Source: Octopus bimaculoides
Taxonomy: Eukaryota
DNA length: 64,000 nucleotides
NCBI RefSeq assembly: GCF_001194135.2
Contig: NC_068984.1
Location: 89,389,641 to 89,453,640 of the forward strand
Reading direction: 5' to 3'
Shown: piece after piece, positions 1-60,709 of the stretch
Layout of the letters: each line of letters begins with the position of its first letter
How positions within the stretch are numbered: the stretch's first letter is position 1
Program-made: the position numbers and the translations under genes
The notes under the pieces: model-generated
Seen by the model: only the letters and a program-made list of their open reading frames with translations
Databases searched by the model: none
What the model was told of the DNA's origin: nothing

Positions 1-218
1 ACTGGCTCATGTGCGGCGACACATGATATCTTTCGAGTGCCCCCGGACTGGCTCATGTGCGGGTGACACATGAAATCTTTCGAGCGGGATCGTTGCCAGT
101 GCCCCTGGACTGGCTCATGTGCGGCGACACATGATATCTTTCGAGTGCCCCCGGACTGGCTCATGTGCGGGCGACACATGATATCTTTCGTGCGAGATCG
201 TTGCCAGTGCCCCTGGAC
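1..218 (-). repeat. Tandem array of the 62-bp structured repeat, alternating 46-bp and 62-bp units (108-bp higher-order period); cut by window start
   Basis: ACTGGCTCATGTG restarts at 1, 47, 109, 155; reverse complement of the array at 2712-3587. Confidence 0.95.
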
Positions 219-354
219 ACACAACATATACACACATACATATATATATACATATATACGATGGGCTTCTTTCAGTTTCCATCTACCAAATCCACTCACA
301 AGGCTTTGGTCGGCCCGAGGCTATAGTAGAAGGCACTTGCCCAAGGTGCCACGC
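219..354 (-). mobile_element. tRNA-derived SINE family 1, partial (runs into gap)
   Basis: Near-identical to 49560-49700 (…AAATCCACTCAC(A/G)AGGCTTTGGTCGGCCCGAGGCTATAGTAGAAG…CACTTGCCCAAGGTGCCACGC). Confidence 0.9.
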
Positions 355-2214: not shown

Positions 2215-2711
2215 TAACTAAAAATTTACTGAGGGCTTAACCCTTACAGCAATAACAACAAAAATTTACCACAAATTGTTGCTGAACCATATGTAGCATG
2301 AACTGGAGAAGGTTTTTTCTAAGAAGCCAAAACGAATTTTAAAAAAATCAGTCTGCTGTTGGGTGGATTTCATTGATCTGGAAGGAGTCTGGGCAAACAT
2401 ACTTTAAGCTATCTTACTGCTTGTAGACTTCTCAAACGATTATGAATTTATTCTATCAGATAAAAATGGAGTAAATTCTTCTAATATAATGCTGTCCCCA
2501 ACAAGTAGTGGTGACAGTAATAATGTTTTATAAGAATAAAAAAACTAAAATTCTTTGTTCTGATGGAGACACTGATTTCTTCATTGATGCTAGAGGATAC
2601 ACATGTACTATTCCTATTTATCAATTGCTGAGTCAACGTCCTTTATATTTCAATTGGGGGATGGGGGTTAAATATGAAAGAACTTGGCTTCACTCTAAAC
2701 AAGATCCCCTC
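2215..2711 (+). mobile_element. RTE-X LINE reverse transcriptase fragment, part 1 (pseudogenised)
   Basis: Decayed motifs NY*GLTLTAITTKIY, EGVWANIL*AILLLVDFS, ME*ILLI..VTVIMFYKNKKTKILCSDGDTDFF match RTE-X NYRGITLTAIAAKIY / EGVRAKNLEAILLFVDFSKAFD / MLYKNTKAxVRSPDGDTDFF. Confidence 0.8.
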
Positions 2712-3587
2712 GTCCAGGGGCACTGGCAACGATCCCGCTCGAAAGATTTCATGTGTCACCCGCACAAGGGCCAGTCCAGTGGCACTGGCAACGATCCCGC
2801 TCGAAAGATCNNNNNNNNNNNNNNNNNNNNNNNNNNNNNNNNNNNNNNNNNNNNNNNNNNNNNNNNNNNNNNNNNNNNNNNNNNNNNNNNNNNNNNNNNN
2901 NNNNNNNNNNNNNNNNNNNNNNNNNNNNNNNNNNNNNNNNNNNNNNNNNNNNNNNNNNNNNNNNNNNNNNNNNNNNNNNNNNNNNNNNNNNNNNNNNNNN
3001 NNNNNNNNNNNNNNNNNNNNNNNNNNNNNNNNNNNNNNNNNNNNNNNNNNNNNNNNNNNNNNNNNNNNNNNNNNNNNNNNNNNNNNNNNNNNNNNNNNNN
3101 NNNNNNNNNNNNNNNNNNNNNNNNNNNNNNNNNNNNNNNNNNNNNNNNNNNNNNNNNNNNNNNNNNNNNNNNNNNNNNNNNNNNNNNNNNNNNNNNNNNN
3201 NNNNNNNNNNNNNNNNNNNNNNNNNNNNNNNNNNNNNNNNNNNNNNNNNNNNNNNNNNNNATCTCGCTCGAAAGATTTCATGTGTCGCCCGCACATGAGC
3301 CAGTCCAGGGGCAATGGCATCGATCCCGCTCGAAAGATTTCATGTGTCTCCCGCACATGAGCCAGTCTATGGGCACTGGCAACGATCCCGCTCGAAACAT
3401 TTCATGTGTCACTCGCACAAGAGCCAGTCCAGGGGCACTGGCAACGATCCTGCTCGAAAGATTTCATGTGTCGCCCGCACATGAGCCAGTCCAGGGGCAC
3501 TGGCAACGATCCCGCTCGAAAGATTTCATGTGTCACCCGCACAAGGGCCAGTCCAGTGGCACTGGCAACGATCCCGCTCGAAAGATC
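2712..3587 (+). repeat. Tandem array of 62-bp structured repeat (contains 450-N gap), flanked by 14-bp direct repeat AAGATCCCCTCGTC
   Basis: Unit GTCCAGGGGCACTGGCAACGATCCCGCTCGAAAGATTTCATGTGTCGCCCGCACATGAGCCA; period 62 (2712 to 2774); direct repeat at 2701-2714 and 3582-3595. Confidence 0.95.
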
Positions 3588-3720
3588 CCCTCGTCACCCA
3601 ACCATATCAATAACAAATGTAGAATATATCAAAGATATTGCTCTCTTTTCAGGCACCATCTCAAAGGTTACCAACCTTCTATTTGAACTTAGAAAAGTAG
3701 AGGCAGATATTGGTCTATAG
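3582..3720 (+). mobile_element. RTE-X RT fragment, part 2 (YADD region)
   Basis: RSPRHPTISITNVEYIKDIALFSGTISKVTNLLFELRKVEADIGL is collinear with RTE-X RSRRYPAQTITDADYADDIALL…AAAGIGL. Confidence 0.8.
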
Positions 3721-3780: not shown

Positions 3781-4140
3781 TGTAGTAACGCTGTGCGCAT
3801 GCGTAGTCTCACGCATGCGTGCAATTCAACAACCAAGCTTTCTCGCTTCATTCTGCCTCTTTCTTGTTGGCCAGCGATTGAGCAAGGACGTGTTTAGCTG
3901 TCTCTCTCCATCTTTCGAACTTACGCTAGACAGCTCGCTCACATCTACATACCAACGTCCCAACAACCAAGCTCACACACACAGAAGACGTCTCAACAAA
4001 CAAGAGCTAAAGATGTATATATTTACCACCTGAATAAATGTTGTTATGTTGATAGTCTGGAGTTCAGCGTTCCGTTAATTCTTAATTTTATATAAGAAAG
4101 TCAAGTATACGTCTAATGATGTATAACCCACTTTCCTATA
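3781..4140 (+). repeat. 5' LTR (360 bp)
   Basis: TGTAG start, TATA-like TATATATTT near 4016, AATAAA at 4033-4038, followed by PBS. Confidence 0.85.
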
Positions 4141-4143
4141 AAG

Positions 4144-4157: not shown

Positions 4158-5637
4158 AAGAAACAAACGCAGCATAGATTCTGGACTACCAACCTATAAC
4201 TGGTGAACCCGACTAAAGAACAAATGCGGCCATGGAGACTGAACTACCAAGCAACGATGACTACCAACGCCATCGACATCTCCAACCATAGTCAACACGA
4301 CTTACTATGTACACCAAACTAAACCACCGCGGCAAATCTCTCTCTTCGATTCTGTTAGGTGACTTAGCTTCACCACGATAATAAACAGACAAGAATTACA
4401 GCCTGCGATACTTCCAATTGTGTACTCAAGAACTTGGTATAAAACTCTCACGTGTACTGACTTTCTATCTGCTGTAATATCTCACATACATATAGACGGC
4501 CTGTCTTTTATTATGTTCTTATATGTCGCATTCACACTCTCACATACACATACATCTTTTATGCCACACTAAATATCTCTTGTTATTCATTTCATACGGT
4601 TGTCTTTTCTATCGTCTCATTACTGGCTATTTATGTTATCGTAATATAACATAATTANNNNNNNNNNNNNNNNNNNNNNNNNNNNNNNNNNNNNNNNNNN
4701 NNNNNNNNNNNNNNNNNNNNNNNNNNNNNNNNNNNNNNNNNNNNNNNNNNNNNNNNNNNNNNNNNNNNNNNNNNNNNNNNNNNNNNNNNNNNNNNNNNNN
4801 NNNNNNNNNNNNNNNNNNNNNNNNNNNNNNNNNNNNNNNNNNNNNNNNNNNNNNNNNNNNNNNNNNNNNNNNNNNNNNNNNNNNNNNNNNNNNNNNNNNN
4901 NNNNNNNNNNNNNNNNNNNNNNNNNNNNNNNNNNNNNNNNNNNNNNNNNNNNNNNNNNNNNNNNNNNNNNNNNNNNNNNNNNNNNNNNNNNNNNNNNNNN
5001 NNNNNNNNNNNNNNNNNNNNNNNNNNNNNNNNNNNNNNNNNNNNNNNNNNNNNNNNNNNNNNNNNNNNNNNNNNNNNNNNNNNNNNNNNNNNNNNNNNNN
5101 NNNNNNNNNNNNNNNNNNNNNNNNNNNNNNNNNNNNNNNNNNNNNNNNNNNNNNNNNNNNNNNNNNNNNNNNNNNNNNNNNNNNNNNNNNNNNNNNNNNN
5201 NNNNNNNNNNNNNNNNNNNNNNNNNNNNNNNNNNNNNNNNNNNNNNNNNNNNNNNNNNNNNNNNNNNNNNNNNNNNNNNNNNNNNNNNNNNNNNNNNNNN
5301 NNNNNNNNNNNNNNNNNNNNNNNNNNNNNNNNNNNNNNNNNNNNNNNNNNNNNNNNNNNNNNNNNNNNNNNNNNNNNNNNNNNNNNNNNNNNNNNNNNNN
5401 NNNNNNNNNNNNNNNNNNNCATTCCGTGATTCCAGTTCCTGGACAGTAGTCATCACGATTTGTTTTCTCATTGTCTCATTTGTTTTTTACTAGGTGGCAT
5501 TTACTGCCCATATTGCATGTTTTTCTTTCATTCCTTCAATTTGTACATTGCATGCATGTATCACACGAGTCTACATTTCATTTCTTTCATTTTTCTTTGT
5601 GTGTGTTTGTGCTACATCTTGTGGGTGGTTTTCAGTG

Positions 5638-5853
5638 GCTAGACAGCTCGCTCACATCTACATACCAACGTCCCAACAACCAAGCTCACACACACAGAAG
5701 ACGTCTCAACAAACAAGAGCTAAAGATGTATATATTTACCACCTGAATAAATGTTGTTATGTTGATAGTCTGGAGTTCAGCGTTCCGTTAATTCTTAATT
5801 TTATATAGGAAAGTCAGGTATACATGTAATGATGTATAACCCACTTTCCTATA
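5638..5853 (+). repeat. 3' LTR, 5'-truncated (216 bp)
   Basis: Matches 3925-4140 with 4 substitutions. Confidence 0.9.
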
Positions 5854-7470
5854 AGTTCATTTTGTACTCAATATCACTTTAAACAATTTCATTGAGAATT
5901 TATTAATGTTTTCAAGAATTTTAGATATTGTTCCTCCCACCACGAAAAAAAAAAAAAAAAAAAGGAAAAGCGAACAACAAATTCAAACAATGATAATTTA
6001 CTAACTCAGGTTCTTTATAATCTAATTTGCGTTTTATGTGCTTTAAATCTGGCATTAAAAAATGTGTCATGATTGCAATTTCATGTTATTTTGATTTTAG
6101 TCTTATCAACGCCTATGTTTGTATTGACAACTGTTACCATGCCAACCGCACCAACGTAAATTCTTCTGTTTCCGCCCTTGCTTACAAGTGTTACACTCAT
6201 ACCCCCATATTAACAACACCAGAGGTTCTTGTCTACTGTTTCCACATTAATGACATCATAGCTGACAAAAAAGAAAAAAAAAAGTCCTGATATGGTAACA
6301 AATCGAGGTTATGAATTCCGACTTTAGTTTAAAATTATCAGTATTTACTACGACACCCACTCCTTATTTGTTTTTTGTTTTTTTATTTAGCAGCAACTTA
6401 TGCTCATTGAAGATATGTTACCACTGTTTTTATAAATATTATTTTCAATACTTGAATAACAGATGGATAAATTACATTCCTCTATTTATTAAATACGTCA
6501 AAAACGTAAAAAAAAAAAAAAAAATCAGTTTGAGAGAAATATTTTTCTGTTATTAAACGGAACATATTTGCCATTTCTTTAACATTTTCTCTAAAAATAC
6601 TGCTTTTACGATTTCAGAATATTCAGAACAATGTGTAACTGTATACTTATATACCGAGATCAGGATTTATCATTATTATAAACCTATTTATTTAGGCTAG
6701 TGATTTCGTTTTGGTTGTTACAATCAATGTTTCAGCTGTTTTACCTTTCTTCAGGTGACTGGTATATTCATTAACGTTCTCGAATCGTAAACCGAACCTT
6801 TATTTAAACCACGCGGTGTGCAGTATCCTCATACTGTTGCATAAGCCCAGGATATTGTCTTCATACTTGTGCTGTATCTTTCTCGTTTCACATCAACCAG
6901 AGTATGAAACTAAAATATAACTTTCACCAGAGTCTTAACTTAAACCAGAGACTGTTGAGTAAATTGTCAGCCCTGTATTATCGATTATTGATTAGTGTTT
7001 TTCATCTGGGTTGTTGTTGTTGTTGATGACGACAACGACGACGGTGATGGACTTCATTCAACTGAGAATCATACTGCACACAGCGACATACAGTGATGAA
7101 TTTTCTTGTTTGTGTGTTATTTCGGTTTTAGTATTTAACTTTGTAGATCATTATGACATATATTAGTGACAGAGCTGATGGAGAGATGAGTCGCTTATAT
7201 ATATATATTTTTTAACAAGTTCACTGGCTGATCGCAACTCCAGTACTTGTTCTGGCACTGTTTTTTCTATATATCACAGGCGGGGAGATAAGTCGCTGCT
7301 ATCTCTTACAGTCGAGCATCCATCATTGAAGAGACCAATGAAGGTCTAAATCACGTGAAGATGGTGGGGGTTTATCTCCCCACTAGCGATATAAACAAGA
7401 GTGCATTTTGCACCAAAAGCCAATATGAGAGTTTCTCTTGTGGTATCTACCACAGTATAGTTTGTTCATA

Positions 7471-15604: not shown

Positions 15605-15787
15605 TAACAGCATGGCTGTGTGATTAAGAAGCTCGCTCTGTAACAACATAGTTTCGGGTTCAGTACCACTGCGCGACACGTTGGGCAAGTGTCTCCTACT
15701 ATTGCCCTGAGTCGAAGAGTGCCTTACGAGTGACTTTAGTAGACAGAAACCGTGGAAGCCCGTCACGCGTGTGTGCATGTGTGTGCA

Positions 15788-36954: not shown

Positions 36955-38110
36955 ATCGCACTACCCGAAAGACAATGACAATGCACAGTGCACTCCACCC
37001 TAAGGCAAATGTACATAGGCTCTACAGGAAGAGAGGTAAAGGCGGACATGGGCTGATTAGAGTGTATCAACACTGAAAGAAGAAACATGAAAGAATATTT
37101 GATAAGCGTCAAACAAGACCTGCTACGGTATGTTGCTAGTGCAGAAGGAGTTAACAAAAATGGACTTGAGAGTGCTCATGAATTCCGATCACGAATAGCC
37201 AACGAGAGAGAAGAAACACTACTCCGTATGGAATTACATGGTCAGTTCCACCGTGAAACCAACAAATTAAAAAACCAGGAAGCATCATGGAAGTGGCTCA
37301 ACAAGGGTGACCTAAAAAAGAATACTGAAAGCCTAAACATCGCTGCCCAGGATCAGGCATTGGTTACCAACTCAGTGAAAAAGAATGTATACCACACAAG
37401 TGCAACGGACCACTGCAGAATGTGTGGGAAGAGGGTCGAAAGCGTAACTCACATTGTTAGTGCTTGTGAAAGTCTTGCACAGAAATAGTACAAGCGTAGA
37501 CACGACAAGGTAGCCCAAAACCTGCACTGGCTACTATGCCGTAAGTATGGATATGAGGCTACAGGTGCTTGGTACCAACATACACCGGAAAAGGTAATGG
37601 ACGAAAAGGGGAAGGCAAAAATCCTCTGGGCTTTGATTTTCAGACAGACAAAGTGTTAGAGCACCGAAGGCCGGATATAGTGGCCTTTAGGAAGGACAAA
37701 CAAGAGTGTCTTGAAGGACAAACAAGAGTGTCATGGCAGTACTAGATCAGCATATCATCATGAATGAAAGAGAAAAGGTTGATAAATATGGGGACCTGAG
37801 AATTGAGATCGCTAAGATGTGACAGCTACGAGTGTCAAACATAAAGTTTATCCCTATTGTCATCGGAGCATTGGGTTCAATAACAACCACTCTGAAAAAC
37901 AAAACATCTGAAAACCTTAGAAATACCCTACAATATAGATGTATTGCAAAAGTCGGCATTACTTGGAACTGCACGCATATTGCGTAAAGTACTATCTATC
38001 TGAGGTCCTTGCTGTGACTTGACAAACAATACAAACCCCCGGTAGACACAATATCTTCAATCAATCAACAACATCACGATATTGTATACTGTGCGACGTC
38101 TATAATAATA
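36955..38110 (+). mobile_element. R4/Dong-like LINE copy C, 5'-truncated, 3' end intact
   Basis: DRTTRKTMTMHSALHPKANVHRLY, ESLNIAAQDQAL, CRMCG…HIVSAC, RHDK, RPD, IPIVIGALG; ends TAATAATA. Confidence 0.9.
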
Positions 38111-42450: not shown

Positions 42451-43744
42451 GCGCCTCTACCTAAAACGGAAACAACGAGGGAGAGGCTTAGCATCGATCC
42501 AAAATACCTTTGAATGTTGCATCATAACCCTTCAGCAACATCTTTTAACCACCAAGTGTCGAAGTGCGTCCCTTGGCCAAGTTTGCATACATGAGGCTGA
42601 TAACATCATAAGACTTGGAAGGCAGCCCCTTGAGCAACACTCTCTGTCTGATAACCTAGAATAGATACCCAAAGAAGCCGCATGTCTCTACTGCAACATA
42701 TCATCAAATGAAAGGGTGAGCCTATATGAGCAGAAGACTATGCATAGATATGTTACTAGAAAGCTCCGTGATGATAGTAACATCGATCATCAAAGCAGTT
42801 TATCAGGGACCAATAGCCGGATTACTACCTCCCACTTTGAAGGGTATGCGTTTGCAATCCAGGAACAGGAAATATCAACCAAGTACCTAATGCACAAAAG
42901 GGATAGAGATGCAGGAAAAGCCGTAAAATGTGACAACCGATGCAGACTTTGTGGAGTTCACACTGAAGATATCACCCACATCATAAGCAGTTGTCCGAAA
43001 ATGTCATCACGGTATTATCTACCAATGAGACATGATGTTGTAGCTAGGACACTCTATAATGAAATCCGTCAGAAGGATAATCCCGAAGACAAAGAAATAA
43101 GAACCCACAATATGGTAGAAGCCATAGCCACTCATAATGAAAAGGAATACTGGTGGAATGTACCAGTGAAGATCTCAATAATATGTAAAAAGAACAGACC
43201 TGATATAATGATTTGGGATAAAGAGAAACTATGCACAGTTGTGGAAATTAGCTGCCCAGCGGATGTTAGCATAAAGCTGAATATCAGTGAAAAAGGGAAC
43301 ACCTATACTGAACTATTGAGAAATCTGCAGGTACTCTATCCAGATTACAAATTCAGGTTTATACCTGTAATTATTGGGGCTCTGGGATATGTAACACACT
43401 GCCTAAATACCAATCTTGAGAAATTAGGCTTCTCAAAACCAGAAAGGAGAAAGCTAATTGGAAGTCTACAGATCCAATTCATCACTAGAACTGTAAAAAT
43501 CTGTAAAACTTTCCAGAAGTCTATTATTTAAATATATATGAGCATCTCTAGATATGTATCTATATGCATGAGAATACATACATAAAACACAGAAATCTGC
43601 ACATACATAATAATACATACATACATACATACATACAAAAATACCCGGTTATTGATGTTGAAGGAACCGTGGATCTAGGTTAGAAACAGGTTCTTTCTCT
43701 ATTGGCAAGAAATCTTGAAAGAAACTGAATAATGACATACATAC
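42451..43744 (+). mobile_element. R4/Dong-related RLE LINE copy D with (TACA)n at both junctions
   Basis: RLYLKRKQRGRGL; EGYAFAIQEQEI; CRLCG…H…C; RHD; RPD…VEISCPAD…EK; IPVIIGALG; 3' UTR ends …TGAATAATGACATACATAC. Confidence 0.85.
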
Positions 43745-47243: not shown

Positions 47244-49374
47244 TAATCCTTGTTTTTTCCAGGCGATGCTATTATGCTAATTAATAATATGTCAAATGTG
47301 TCAATTAGCGGTGTCGTTGATAATTTTTTCCTTACTCTAATGACGCTGGTGACATATATTAGAAGTTCCCTTGTAGAACTATATTCATAAAAAAGTTTAG
47401 AACTATATTATAACCCTCAAATTTGAGAAACAAATATTCATAACTTTTTTCTTTTAAAACTTCATTGCATGAAATTTCGCGAATTGAGCTCTATCATTTA
47501 GGCTTAATTAAAATATAGTTTGTTTTTAAAATAAAGAAGTTAATTATACTTAAATCCAATTTTTTGCCTTACTTATATTTTTTTCCTGATATTTTACTTT
47601 TTGATACAAATTTTTGCTGCATGGGACCAAAACTAGGAAATCCTTCATGTTTTCTTCTATCATTGAAGCTAAGATAAATATATTTTGCTTTTAAAATAAA
47701 AAGAGTTATTTAGATCTAAACTTGATTGGTGACGTTACTTACTCTCCTATAACGTTGCTACAAATTTTGATGTAAACTTTTTTTCTACTGGATCAAATCT
47801 CAATTTGTTTATGCCAAAATGTAACTAGGGACCAGTACTCTTAAAATATGTTAACAGTTTTCAATTTGGCTAAGAAGTGAATTACGGCTGCATGTGAGTA
47901 AATTGCGGCTTTAAGAATATTATTCAACCGCTACCGTAGTTGAATGTTTCATATTGGATTGCCGAAAGTGTTATAGTATCGATTACCATGATAACAGTGT
48001 GCGAGCGCGTGCACGTGTGTGCATAGGCTCATGAATAACGTTGCTGTTGCCGCTATTATTATACAAGCACACGATGTAACTGGTTGGCGAAAATCTATCG
48101 ACTAGCACTCTACAACTACTGGACATCAGCACCTCTTCCCTCCATTTTTGTTTTGTTCCGCCAGCATATCACTCCTACCTAGAACTACGACCTTCTGAAA
48201 CTCATATCTCCTCACATTCTTTTCACGTACAGAAGTTGATGATAAGCATTAGACTGCATAAACCCTTCACCTCAATTTGGGAGGTCCTGCGAAGGAAGTA
48301 GGTACTACGCTGCTCCTGAATAATAAAAATTGCCTTTTCGAAGTTTATAAATGTGTTTTTATGTCTCGTTCATTGATGTTTGGGTGTAGTCATAGGAGAA
48401 TAAGGTTTGTTTTCCACGTGATTATTGGCAGCTAGGAGGAGTGTGGATCAGAACGTGACGTTTGAAGAGACGTTTTTGCAGTTTGCTCGGTGTGGCGTGT
48501 GTTGGTGTGTGTTGTTTTAAGTGTCAAGAGAATTCAGTTATGGCGCTATTGTGTTTCATGTTACTGGCTTTTCTTTTTGAATGCTTGTATTTCTATAATG
48601 TTGTCATGACCTATTTGTGTTCGAATGACGTCTGTGATATCAGTGAATTAGAGAAACATTTGTTTATAAATGTTATGATGTTATCACTATGATTTTGCTT
48701 GTTCTAGGATTGGAAGAGGTTCAGTGTGAAGTTGTTCTGTATTTTATATTACTACTATGGCCTTGGGTGATGATGAGGAATTTCAGCTTCACGAACCTGT
48801 TTATTAAGTCGTTTATGCTGAACTCTATTGATCCGTTTATAAGGTACAATAGGATATAACAGGTTGAGAAACCTCGAAATATTCCTTTGCTGGCCATCTA
48901 TTAAGTCATTAAACCGTGGTCATATTGGGACATTACTTTCCAGGGCTGTGGGTCTTAACCTTTTGTAGCCCAGTATTCTGGTGTTTTTCAATCATCCCAT
49001 CATTATGCAAAAATAAACAAATACAAAAATGAATTAAAGAAAACAGCAGATTATTTTAATCAAACAAGTAAATTTTTCGCAGTACTTTATTATCCACTTT
49101 TTCTTAATCTATCCCATCCAGCATATGCTTCTTTTATGTTTTTTTTTTCTCTCGGTATTTGCGGGAACTAAAGCCCCTTACATTAGACTATTTGAAGGAA
49201 ATTGCTAAAGGAGGCGAAAATCATATAACGAAGTTATATTGGATCTTGGCATATCATTAGACATGTTTCTTTCCACTCACCACACAATAGCCTATTCATG
49301 ATTTACTCTCAAGAAAGATTTTTTGAAATGTTTTTAAAATATAATTATTGCACTTAGTATAAATGTCTTACTAT

Positions 49375-49765
49375 TTGCTCTTTTACTTGTTTCAGTCATT
49401 TGACTGCGGCCATGCCGGAGCACCGCCTTTAGTCGAGTAAATCGACCCCAGGACTTATTCTTTGTAAGCCTAGTATTTATTCTATCGGTCTCTTTTGCCG
49501 AACCGCTAAGTTACGGGGACGTAACCACACCTGCATTGGTTGTCAAGCGATGCTGGGGGACAAACACAGACACACAAACATACATATATATATATACATA
49601 TATACGACGGGCTTCTTTCAGTTTCCGTCTACCAAATCCACTCACGAGGCTTTGGTCGGCCCGAGGCTATAGTAGAAGACACTTGCCCAAGGTGCCACGC
49701 AGTGGGACTGAACCTGGAACCATGTGGTTGGTAAGCAAGCTACTTACCACACAGCCACTCCTGCG
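49375..49765 (-). mobile_element. tRNA-derived SINE family 1, full-length-like
   Basis: Minus-strand head GCAGGAGTGGCTGTGTGG…GGTTCAGTCCC. Confidence 0.9.
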
Positions 49766-49784: not shown

Positions 49785-50145
49785 TTAACTTGTTTCAGTC
49801 ATTAGACTGCGGGCACGCTGTGGATACCGCCTTGAATAATTTTTTTCAGTTGACTGAATCGACACCAGTACTTTTTTTAAAGCCTGGTACTTATTCTATC
49901 AATCTCTTTTGCTGAACCGCTAATTTACGGGGATATGAACATACTAGCACTGGTTGTCAAGCAGTGTTGGGGAAACACACACGCACACACACACGCGCGC
50001 GCGACGGGTTGATTTCAGTTTCCATCTACCAAATCCACTCACAAGGCTTTATTCGGCTCGAAGCTATAACAGAAGTGTCAAGGTGTCATGCGGAATCATG
50101 TGGTTGGGAAGCAAGCTTCTTACCACATAGTTACGCCTGTGCCTA
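49785..50145 (-). mobile_element. tRNA-derived SINE family 1, older adjacent copy
   Basis: Collinear with 49375-49765, more diverged. Confidence 0.8.
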
Positions 50146-59449: not shown

Positions 59450-60709
59450 GAATTCCATGTCCTTTTTGTACTTCCTTTGTTTTTCATTTTTTCTCTGCTT
59501 TCAATACTCCCTCGTTCCTAATTATCATAGCAAGGTTTCCCTACTTTGGGCTAGGTATCTCATTAAGCTCTCGAGTTCGATACGCACACAGTCTTCTACA
59601 CTTATCAGTACCCTTCCTTCATTCGCTTTCTTCATGTATAGGCGATCAGTGTCTGCACGTGGATGATGTCACGTGGATGATGTCATGCATCGTTAGGAGC
59701 TTTCTTGACTTCCTGTTTATCTCCTTTAGCTCCTCCTCTGTCCACTTCAGGATTCCAGCGCCATACCGAACTACTGCGACTGCGTGCGAGTTTATTGCCG
59801 GAATTATGTTTCTGGCATTCAGCTTTGAAGCCAATATTTTTCTCGCTGCAGGTACTCTCTTTTTGTCTTTTCCTTCATGCTATTGCGTTTGATTCCATCT
59901 ACCTCAAGTATTTCCAGTTATTTATCGTTGGTTTGAGGTTGACTTCCCTTCATCCTTCCACTACTTGGCAACCATATGCCTTCTGTCATAACAAGTTTTC
60001 CTCGTCTCATTTTGTAATGTTCGTTTTCCATTACTCCCTCTGGCTTGTGTTCATACCATTGTTCGGCTCTCTCGAGATTTGCTTTACCGCACAACAGCCA
60101 GTGGACATATCTGGATACGTTGTCGTGTTTCCTTTTGTATTCGCGTTGTGCGAACTTACAGCACTCACAATATGGCTTACACTTTCTCCCTTCTTAGAGT
60201 ACAACCTACACTGTGGCGAGTAAGTGCTTTTATCAATGTGATATTTGGAGTTATTTTTTCTGAGAGCTTGTCCTCGAGCGCTGCACACTAATGCCTCAGT
60301 GGGCCCTTTTAAGTCTCCTTTCTGCAGCCATTGCCAGGTTCTATTCCAATCAGTCTCATCTTTATTCTTCAAGAACTGACTGTGCATTTTCTTGTCCTGC
60401 CAAATTTTCATCTGCTCTCTCTGGTCTTTCTTAAATTGTGTTGGATCTACGGCTTCGTTTACTTTTAAGGTTCCCTGCATCTTCACTACCTCAATCATTT
60501 CTTTACTCCCTTTGACATACCAAGCCAGGCTATTCTCATCTTCCCTTACACAACCTTCACACCACATCAATCTCCACCCTTCTTCTTTCCTCTTTACGTA
60601 CAACCTTGGCACACCACTCTTGAGGTGTAGTTCCTTGTTCATTGTCATTAATTTACGTGTTCTCCGGTCTATCTCTTGTAATTCCATTCATCATCTAAGA
60701 TACTATTCC
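59450..60709 (-). mobile_element. R4/Dong-like LINE copy E, fusion of two segments, starting at (TAA)n
   Basis: ELQEIDRRTRKLMTM…KGPTEALVCSA…CRLYS…HIVS (60709-60005) followed by RRGKLV…KYLE…SKLNARNIIPAINSHAVAVVRYGAGILKW (60005-59450). Confidence 0.85.

What the first reader, a model, noticed from the sequence alone, without database searches (positions are those of the whole stretch)
2701..3595. A 62-bp tandem array inserted as a unit into an RTE-X reading frame, with a 14-bp target duplication
Seen in sequence: AAGATCCCCTCGTC flanks the array on both sides (2701-2714, 3582-3595). Removing the array and one copy restores a continuous RTE-X RT frame (…RSPRHPTISITNVEYIKDIA…, cf. RSRRYPAQTITDADYADDIA), so the array is an insertion rather than an in situ amplification. 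The duplication overlaps the array at both ends: GTC with the start, AAGAT(C) with the end. Inference: a coding-free tandem repeat that moves by TPRT of an array transcript with microhomology at both junctions, by circle integration, or by polymerase-theta-type templated insertion. No known MITE, Helitron or LTR signature fits. Caveat: the 97 bp before the gap (2714-2810) are identical to the last units (3490-3587), so the array length may be an assembly artefact.
Basis: partly seen in the sequence, partly recalled or inferred. Interest (0 to 1): 0.8.

Follow-up and report, generated by a model that had tools for sequence, protein, structure and literature searches.

The report
Octopus minisatellite inserted into dead retrotransposon
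A short non-coding 62-bp tandem repeat of an octopus genome sits inside a decayed retrotransposon gene and is flanked by a duplicated piece of that gene, so repeat DNA was copied in from elsewhere; how long the repeat is and what moved it cannot be settled from this gapped assembly.

Summary
The sequence facts hold. AAGATCCCCTCGTC occurs exactly twice in the window, at 2701-2714 and 3582-3595. It brackets a 62-bp tandem array.

Real reverse-transcriptase proteins align collinearly across the two flanks. RT residues up to about 215 map to 2234-2703, and residues 217-261 map to the 14-mer plus 3596-3717. The 14-mer encodes RT residues (RSPR), so retrotransposon sequence was duplicated around foreign repeat DNA.

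Corrections:
- The RT copy is a pseudogene, and the left flank is out of frame with the quoted peptide.
- Only CCCCTC is unambiguously duplicated. AAGAT and GTC also fit the array phase, so the duplication is 6-14 bp with 5-nt and 3-nt junction microhomologies.
- The interior is unknown. The N run breaks the repeat phase. The left contig's last 99 nt copy the array's right end exactly, including the junction base C.

A second array (1-218, inverted) abuts a SINE at the same register with GTCC overlap. A third exists in an Octopus bimaculoides gene model.

Most likely mechanism: LINE-type target-primed reverse transcription of an array transcript (about 0.4). DNA-level template switching or capture gives the same junctions. 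No genome-wide survey was possible. Dispersed satellite arrays with such junctions are already described elsewhere.

The parts
2234..2700 (+). Left part of a decayed RTE-like LINE reverse-transcriptase pseudogene (host of the insertion)
   Evidence: tblastn of real PF00078 proteins. P0082 residues 56-131, 135-179 and 176-~215 map here in three different frames with stops. phmmer of 2508-2660 hits the RT fragment P0002, E=2e-8.
2701..2714 (+). Left copy of the duplicated target AAGATCCCCTCGTC. It encodes RT residues RSPR(H). Its last 3 nt (GTC) are also in array phase.
2715..2810 (+). Array, left contig end: 1.56 units of the 62-bp repeat. Together with 2712-2714 it is identical to 3489-3587.
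2811..3260 (.). Assembly gap (450 N, estimated length). It breaks the repeat phase and its content is unknown.
   Evidence: A phase-true gap would be 417 or 479 nt.
3261..3581 (+). Array, right contig: 5.3 units of the 62-bp repeat, about 91% alike
3582..3595 (+). Right copy of AAGATCCCCTCGTC. Its first 5 nt (AAGAT) are also in array phase. From C3587 onward it is unambiguously RT sequence.
3596..3717 (+). Right part of the same RT pseudogene (...HPTISITNVEYIKDIALFSGT...IGL)
   Evidence: tblastn P0082 216-261, P0009 166-215, P0103 182-227, E down to 2e-9
1..218 (-). Second array of the same family, inverted and cut by the window start. Units of 62 and 46 bp alternate (108-bp higher-order period).
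219..354 (-). SINE-like repeat (microsatellite plus body) that abuts the second array. The SINE sequence is followed as far as ...TGTCC and then replaced by array ...AGGGGCACTGG, with a 4-nt overlap (GTCC).
   Evidence: alignment with the complete copy at 49370-49762

Best explanation
Shown: a piece of a dispersed, non-coding 62-bp minisatellite family was inserted into an old, already decaying RTE-like LINE pseudogene of an Octopus genome. The event duplicated 6-14 bp of the target. Both junctions are seamless and lie on short identities between target and repeat: AAGAT at the 3' side and GTC at the 5' side.

Inferred mechanism:
1. A transcript of an array (sense = + strand here, 5'-(GU)CCAGGGGCACUGG...) was reverse-transcribed at the target by the endonuclease/RT of an active LINE (target-primed reverse transcription in trans).
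2. The nicked bottom strand ending 5'-...ATCTT-3' paired with ...AAGAU in the repeat RNA. This pairing set the 3' register.
3. A second nick 14 nt downstream freed a top-strand end ...GTC-3', which paired with the end of the cDNA.
4. Fill-in produced the flanking duplication.

The array may have been inserted at its present length or as little as 1.5 units and then grown by unequal exchange.
For: Shown:
- The 14-mer occurs exactly twice.
- Both copies are RT sequence, and the flanks are adjacent parts of one RT.
- The array family is present at two other loci.
- The unit is unrelated to the neighbouring SINE.
- No TIRs, no tRNA and no Rfam family.

Pattern fitting TPRT:
- The duplication length lies in the LINE range.
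- The microhomology sits at the start of the duplication on the 3' side and at its end on the 5' side. That is where priming and second-strand joining put it.
- 3'-end/target overlap is documented for L1, CR1, L2 and RTE (PMC6007223).
- By arithmetic, blunt joining would give overlaps of at least 5 nt and at least 3 nt together with P about 1.5e-5.

Context:
- Octopus genomes carry many recently active LINE and SINE families (PMC13282606).
- The second array is fused to a SINE in the same orientation with a 4-nt overlap at the same array register. An RT template switch at the 5' end of an array RNA would give this.
Against: - There is no poly(A) and no recognisable LINE 3' tail at the array's 3' end.
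- Neither orientation shows the RTE-type target signature described in PMC6007223 (a T stretch about 10 nt upstream, duplication starting with T).
- This is one event only.
- The shared 5' register of the two arrays has a chance probability of about 0.13 by arithmetic. Microhomology-driven joining would also favour it.
- No RNA evidence exists.
- The two arrays lie only 2.5 kb apart in inverted orientation (about 0.08 by chance). That suits local DNA template switching better.
- The interior is unsequenced and the left contig end duplicates the right end.
Confidence: 0.4

Rival explanations
1. DNA-level copy-in without RNA. One form is a replicative template switch (FoSTeS/MMBIR-type). A nascent strand ending ...GTC left the RT locus, annealed to GTC|CAGGGG of another array (possibly the inverted one 2.5 kb away), copied some units, and returned on AAGAT 14 nt behind its departure point. 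The other form is capture of a linear or circular extrachromosomal array fragment at a staggered break by microhomology-mediated end joining.
For: - Both junctions sit on microhomology and a short duplication marks the return point.
- A second array lies 2.5 kb away in inverted orientation.
- There is no poly(A) or LINE tail.
- Satellite insertions with 4-7 bp junction microhomology, and in some cases a 32-bp duplication of adjacent sequence, are described for Rsp-like in Drosophila, where eccDNA was detected (PMC7403614).
- eccDNA and microhomology are also reported for Tribolium Cast satellites (PMC11610590).
- If the 97-99-nt terminal redundancy is real, it would fit a rolling-circle copy of a circle of about 12-13 units.
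Against: - The visible part of the nearby array has a different unit structure (62+46 bp) and different variants from the first units of this array, so it is not a recent direct template.
- For a once-cut circle the two ends of the insert should be adjacent in the unit. Here 20-28 nt of a unit are missing between end and start.
- A 14-nt staggered break is unusual without an endonuclease.
- Pol-theta templated insertions are usually tens of nt, not hundreds (background knowledge).
Confidence: 0.3
2. Only a short element (about 1.5 units, 97 nt) was inserted, by either mechanism above. The longer array arose afterwards in place by unequal exchange or slippage, or it exists only on one haplotype. 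On this reading the 'array moved as a unit' claim is wrong although the insertion is real.
For: - The left contig runs from the left junction through 97 nt straight to the right-junction base C. This path is identical to the last 99 nt of the right contig and is unique among the 10 gaps.
- The units differ by about 9%, and the second array has its own 108-bp higher-order structure. Both show that arrays evolve locally.
Against: - The right contig places at least 3.7 further units directly upstream of the same 99 nt.
- The scaffolder estimated a positive 450-nt gap rather than an overlap.
Confidence: 0.15
3. Assembly artefact: the duplication or one junction is a misjoin of repeat-containing contigs, and no flanked insertion exists.
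For: The locus contains an unsequenced gap, the repeat phase is broken across it, and the left contig end copies the right end.
Against: - Each junction lies inside a contig, not at a scaffold join.
- The two contigs carry adjacent, same-strand parts of one RT pseudogene that is unique in the window.
- Both copies of the 14-mer continue the RT alignment correctly on their own side.
Confidence: 0.05

Closest known systems
Euchromatic satellite insertions in Drosophila (Rsp-like into 1.688 clusters; Sproul et al. 2020, PMC7403614)
   Same: Short non-coding tandem arrays appear at new loci. The junctions sit on 4-7 bp microhomology, and some insertions are flanked by a duplication of adjacent sequence. 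The mechanism is unresolved (MMEJ, eccDNA or template switching).
   Different: There the targets are pre-existing satellite clusters, and spread is partly by hitch-hiking of hybrid repeats. Here the target is a unique LINE pseudogene, the duplication is short, and both junctions are clean.
Cast satellites of Tribolium castaneum dispersed in gene-rich regions (Volaric et al. 2024, PMC11610590)
   Same: Many short arrays are scattered in euchromatin. Junction microhomology is reported for some, and TE-carried and eccDNA-mediated spread are proposed.
   Different: No regular end register or target duplication was reported there, and the junctions are poly(A)/(T)-rich. Here the junctions are not A/T tracts.
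Mollusc satellite arrays and Helitron/Helentron-carried tandem repeats (Satovic et al. 2016, PMC5139131)
   Same: Same phylum. Short arrays show abrupt transitions to flanking DNA, often next to TE fragments and microsatellites.
   Different: The Helitron-carried arrays sit between element-specific flanks and make no target duplication. Here the repeat itself abuts duplicated target on both sides.
LINE-mobilised short retroposons and retrocopies, including RTE-related SINEs (Nishiyama & Ohshima 2018, PMC6007223)
   Same: Variable target duplication of about 10-15 bp. The 3' end of the RNA overlaps the first bases of the duplication. A repeat at the RNA 3' end sets the priming register.
   Different: The array has no promoter-bearing head and no LINE-derived or poly(A) tail. 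The RTE target signature (T stretch upstream, T-initial duplication) is absent. The body is nothing but tandem units.
Satellite-like W-elements of Schistosoma mansoni (Stitz et al. 2021, PMC8490949)
   Same: Transcribed satellite-like repeats have autosomal copies, and at least one example is flanked by direct repeats at the presumptive target site. Mobility was inferred from this.
   Different: Several W-element families carry hammerhead ribozymes or TE fragments. No ribozyme or TE homology was found in the 62-bp unit.

Membership tests
LINE-mediated retrocopy (TPRT product) | Flanking target-site duplication of variable length, roughly 5-20 bp | tested here: met
   A 14-nt exact direct repeat, of which 6 nt are unambiguous. 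Both copies are RT sequence.
LINE-mediated retrocopy (TPRT product) | Overlap between the 3' end of the inserted sequence and the first bases of the duplication | tested here: met
   AAGAT (5 nt) is shared by array phase and the start of the duplication.
LINE-mediated retrocopy (TPRT product) | Poly(A) or partner-LINE 3' tail at the 3' end | tested here: not met
   The array ends ...GCTCGAAAGAT with no A-run. Whether the unit matches the 3' tail of some octopus LINE could not be tested because no octopus repeat library was available.
LINE-mediated retrocopy (TPRT product) | Endonuclease target motif at the first nick | tested here: inconclusive
   This is a single site. Neither strand shows the RTE-type T stretch about 10 nt upstream with a T-initial duplication (read against PMC6007223).
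LINE-mediated retrocopy (TPRT product) | RNA intermediate | not testable with these tools
   No transcriptome data were accessible.
SINE | Pol III promoter head derived from tRNA, 5S or 7SL | tested here: not met
   No tRNA (ARAGORN), no Rfam match in the array, and no similarity to the neighbouring SINE.
TIR DNA transposon / MITE | Terminal inverted repeats next to the duplication | tested here: not met
   The only inverted pairs are the unit's own hairpin and weak distant matches.
Helitron / Helentron carrying tandem repeats | No target duplication, 5'-TC and 3'-CTRR ends with a subterminal hairpin, insertion at AT or TT | tested here: not met
   A duplication is present. The insert starts (GT)CCAGGGG and ends GCTCGA(AAGAT).
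LTR retrotransposon / TRIM | Terminal direct repeats TG...CA, a 4-6 bp duplication, and PBS/PPT | tested here: not met
   The identical 97-99 nt at both ends are array units without TG...CA, and further array lies between them.
Ribozyme-bearing tandem repeats (retrozymes, hammerhead satellites) | Self-cleaving ribozyme motif in each unit | tested here: not met
   No hammerhead or other ribozyme family at E<=1 on either strand. The unit's folding energy is not unusual (z = -1.15).
Dispersed euchromatic satellite / minisatellite arrays | Tandem non-coding monomers present as short arrays at several unrelated loci | tested here: met
   Arrays at 1-218 and 2714-3586, plus a third locus in O. bimaculoides gene model A0A0L8HVX5. 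Copy number genome-wide is unknown.
Dispersed euchromatic satellite / minisatellite arrays | Abrupt junctions on microhomology | tested here: met
   GTC and AAGAT at this array; GTCC at the array/SINE junction.
Dispersed euchromatic satellite / minisatellite arrays | Presence on extrachromosomal circular DNA | not testable with these tools
   No Circle-seq data were accessible.

The most novel reading that the evidence does not exclude
The 62-bp repeat is a head-less, tail-less 'retro-satellite'. Array transcripts with a defined 5' end (GUCCAGGGG...) are routinely copied into new sites by an octopus LINE, and the tandem repeat itself serves as the priming tail, so any unit can pair with the nicked target. 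Transcripts may possibly derive from rolling-circle templates, which would make the 97-99-nt terminal redundancy real. This would yield a genome-wide family of arrays flanked by target duplications, with a fixed 5' register and a target-dependent 3' register.
Probability: 0.15. Interest if true: 0.7.

Novelty: new member of a known kind. Interest (0 to 1): 0.4.

Why it matters
How short satellite arrays reach new euchromatic sites is an open question. The current candidates are TE carriage, eccDNA reintegration, and gene conversion or template switching (PMC11610590, PMC7403614).

This locus is a clean, datable example. The host is a recognisable RT pseudogene, so the empty site can be reconstructed, and both junctions are readable. 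If many arrays of this family show the same duplication length, strand-consistent 3' overlap and fixed 5' register, that would be direct sequence evidence for LINE-driven retroposition of pure tandem repeats in a genome with many recently active LINE and SINE families (PMC13282606).

As a single, gapped locus it is only a lead.

Tried and rejected
External copies of the repeat:
- Two exact-pattern scans of metagenome contigs, two of genome contigs and one of viral contigs found nothing.
- A protein search with the array translation found one protein only, from O. bimaculoides. Its gene is not on record for context.
- Nine window ORFs are not in the protein collection.
- The one related contig fetched (L001, through RT fragment P0002) has neither the array nor the octopus SINE.
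- A genome-wide junction table was therefore impossible.

RT homology by direct routes:
- The stitched translation gave no database hit and no Pfam hit.
The probe was used only to fetch real PF00078 proteins, and those proteins did the test.

Origins and classes considered and rejected:
- Origin of the unit from the adjacent SINE: the alignment score is below the shuffle mean.
- Origin from local RT sequence: the empty-site 40-mer is no more similar to the unit than 11% of random 40-mers.
- Foldback-type element with the two inverted arrays as arms: the RT pseudogene lies on both sides of the right array alone.
- Structured RNA or ribozyme: rejected.
- tRNA-like head: rejected.
- TIRs: rejected.
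- Systematic gap-edge duplication in this assembly: rejected, because only this gap shows it.

Literature: searching the repeat's sequence strings found nothing.

Full report
**Source**

The window is gapped eukaryotic DNA with ten N runs. A protein search with the array's translation returned a single hit, an uncharacterised Octopus bimaculoides protein (A0A0L8HVX5). From memory, the dispersed SINE-like repeat in the window is the abundant octopus SINE. I treat the source as an Octopus genome.

**Observation**

- AAGATCCCCTCGTC lies at 2701-2714 and 3582-3595. It has no other match in 64 kb even with two mismatches allowed (0.11 expected).
- Between the two copies lies a 62-bp tandem repeat. 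TRF gives 3261-3586, period 62, 5.3 copies, 91% matches.
- In-register units start at 2714, 2776, 3305, 3367, 3429, 3491 and 3553.

**The gap (tested first, as asked)**

- The left contig stops at unit position 35 and the right contig starts at unit position 19. A phase-true gap must therefore be 45+62n nt (417 or 479); 450 N is only an estimate.
- The contig ends cannot be overlapped without mismatches.
- The last 99 nt of the left contig (2712-2810) equal 3489-3587 exactly. They share two private unit variants and the terminal C of GAAAGATC.
- Every other unit has T or A after GAAAGAT. C is the first unambiguous base of the right junction.
- Units otherwise differ by about 9%, so chance identity over 97 nt is about 1e-4 (arithmetic).
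- Two readings remain. The assembler may have walked from the left junction into right-end reads, or a short allele may exist. Alternatively the array is truly terminally redundant.
- None of the other nine gaps shows such a copy.
- Array length is therefore unknown. It lies between 97 nt and about 870 nt as scaffolded.

**Are the flanks one gene?**

- Direct routes failed. The stitched translation found nothing in the large protein collection or in Pfam.
- A phmmer search of 2508-2660 against 1.8 billion representatives found an RT-like fragment, P0002 (E=2e-8).
I used it only to fetch real proteins.
- 7,995 proteins scored E<=1e-5, and the 120 listed all carry Pfam PF00078.
- tblastn of these against the real window gives, for P0082:
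  - residues 56-131 on 2234-2452;
  - residues 135-179 on 2463-2597;
  - residues 176-~215 on 2572-2703 (ending ...MKELGFTLNK);
  - residues 216-261 on 3580-3717 (RSPRHPTISITNVEYIKDIAL...IGL).
- P0009 and P0103 behave the same way.
- Joining the flanks with one copy of the 14-mer gives an ungapped 45-46-aa match across the join. With no copy, three to four residues are lost. With two copies, four extra residues (IPSS) appear.
- The 14-mer encodes RSPR(H), which aligns to RSRR(Y) of the RT proteins.
- So both copies are RT sequence, and the two contigs hold adjacent, same-strand parts of one RT copy that is unique in the window.
- This is an 'empty site' reconstructed from homology. It also argues against a scaffolding error.

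- The quoted peptide is encoded by the 14-mer plus the right flank only.
- The left flank is in a different frame (a 2-nt deficit at 2701/2702). The copy has at least three frameshifts and several stops. It is a pseudogene, and homology is continuous but the frame is not.

**Anatomy of the junctions**

- The array phase reads ...GCCAGT|CCAGGGG... and ...CTCGAAAGAT|TTCATG...
- At the left junction, GTC (2712-2714) fits both the RT sequence and the array.
- At the right junction, AAGAT (3582-3586) fits both.
- Only CCCCTC is unambiguously duplicated. The duplication is therefore 6-14 bp, with 3-nt and 5-nt microhomologies and no filler bases.
- Blunt joining would give such overlaps with P about 4^-3 x 4^-5 = 1.5e-5 (arithmetic).
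- In passing, the 14-mer also resembles an internal part of the unit (GATCCC-CTCG against GATCCCGCTCG). Only 2.9% of random window 14-mers match as well. This may be chance.

**The repeat family**

- A second array occupies 1-218 on the minus strand, with alternating 62- and 46-bp units (108-bp period).
- It abuts a SINE-like repeat. Alignment with the complete copy at 49370-49762 shows the SINE is followed as far as ...TGTCC and is then replaced by array AGGGGCACTGG... The overlap is 4 nt (GTCC), and the array has the same orientation as the SINE.
- Both arrays thus begin at the same unit register, (GT)CCAGGGG. The chance of this is about 0.13 (arithmetic), and less surprising if joining is microhomology-driven.
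- A third array is translated in gene model A0A0L8HVX5 (tblastn to a consensus array, E=1.5e-30, with a shorter unit variant).
- The unit has no Rfam match on either strand, so no hammerhead or other ribozyme. Its folding energy is unremarkable.
- There is no tRNA and no similarity to the SINE.
- There are no terminal inverted repeats.
- The ends are not TC/CTRR or TG/CA.

**Mechanism**

- What is shown is a copy-in of foreign repeat DNA with target duplication and double microhomology.
- I favour target-primed reverse transcription of an array transcript by a LINE enzyme (about 0.4), for these reasons:
  - the duplication length is in the LINE range;
  - the overlaps lie where priming (start of the duplication) and second-strand joining (end of the duplication) put them;
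  - overlap between RNA 3' ends and targets, and repeats that set the priming register, are documented for RTE and other clades (PMC6007223);
  - octopus genomes have many recently active LINE and SINE families (PMC13282606);
  - the SINE-array fusion looks like an RT template switch.
- Against this: no poly(A) or known LINE tail, no RTE target signature, one event only, and no RNA data.
- A DNA-level event gives identical junctions (about 0.3). It could be replicative template switching (FoSTeS/MMBIR), possibly from the inverted array 2.5 kb away, or capture of extrachromosomal array DNA. Satellite insertions of this kind, some with duplicated adjacent sequence and with eccDNA detected, are described in Drosophila and Tribolium (PMC7403614; PMC11610590).
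- The visible units of the nearby array do not match the first units here. For a once-cut circle the insert ends should be adjacent in the unit, but 20-28 nt are missing.
- Insertion of only about 1.5 units followed by local growth is compatible with either mechanism (about 0.15).
- A pure artefact is unlikely (about 0.05).

**Comparison and novelty**

- Dispersed short satellite arrays with abrupt, microhomology-bearing junctions, sometimes with duplicated target, are known from Drosophila, Tribolium, molluscs (PMC5139131) and Schistosoma (PMC8490949).
- This is a new member of that kind, from an octopus, with an unusually clean reconstructed empty site.
- I found no description of this repeat in the searchable literature. 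Repbase and Dfam could not be consulted.

**Limits**

No octopus genome, read set or repeat library was reachable. The decisive genome-wide junction table, the long-read check and the orthologous empty site remain to be done.

Noticed in passing
window 1-354 (minus strand): A second array of the same 62-bp family has alternating 62- and 46-bp units (108-bp period). It is fused to a SINE-like repeat exactly at ...TGTCC|AGGGG, with a 4-nt overlap, in the same orientation as the SINE and at the same array register as the 5' end of the studied array. Its other end lies outside the window.
   Followed up: partly
window 49370-49762, 49960-50120, 27029-27096, 15671-15764: Further copies or fragments of the SINE-like repeat. 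The first is complete and 94% identical to 230-354. Rfam finds no tRNA in it.
   Followed up: partly
window 3925-4141 and 5638-5854: A 217-bp stretch is repeated at 98% identity on both sides of the gap at 4658-5419, with different upstream and downstream sequence. It is either a young dispersed repeat or two haplotype contigs placed in tandem.
   Followed up: no
window 2701-2714 vs unit positions 18-28; 2711-2714+3596-3599 vs unit positions 41-47: The target 14-mer resembles an internal part of the repeat unit (GATCCC-CTCG against GATCCCGCTCG; 2.9% tail of random 14-mers). The reconstructed empty site also shares GTCACCC with the unit. This could be chance or a hint of homology-assisted targeting.
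   Followed up: partly
window 37087-37488 (+), also 28436-28834, 42716-43531, 60031-60687: ORFs that look like remnants of other non-LTR retrotransposons. Only 37087-37485 gets a weak Pfam zf-RVT hit. The window is largely TE debris and microsatellites.
   Followed up: partly
L001 (ENA ERZ21867824 ctg121955l, 245863-266129): This contig carries the RT fragment P0002, which is 49% identical to the window's RT piece. It contains neither the 62-bp repeat nor the octopus SINE, so it is from another organism.
   Followed up: partly
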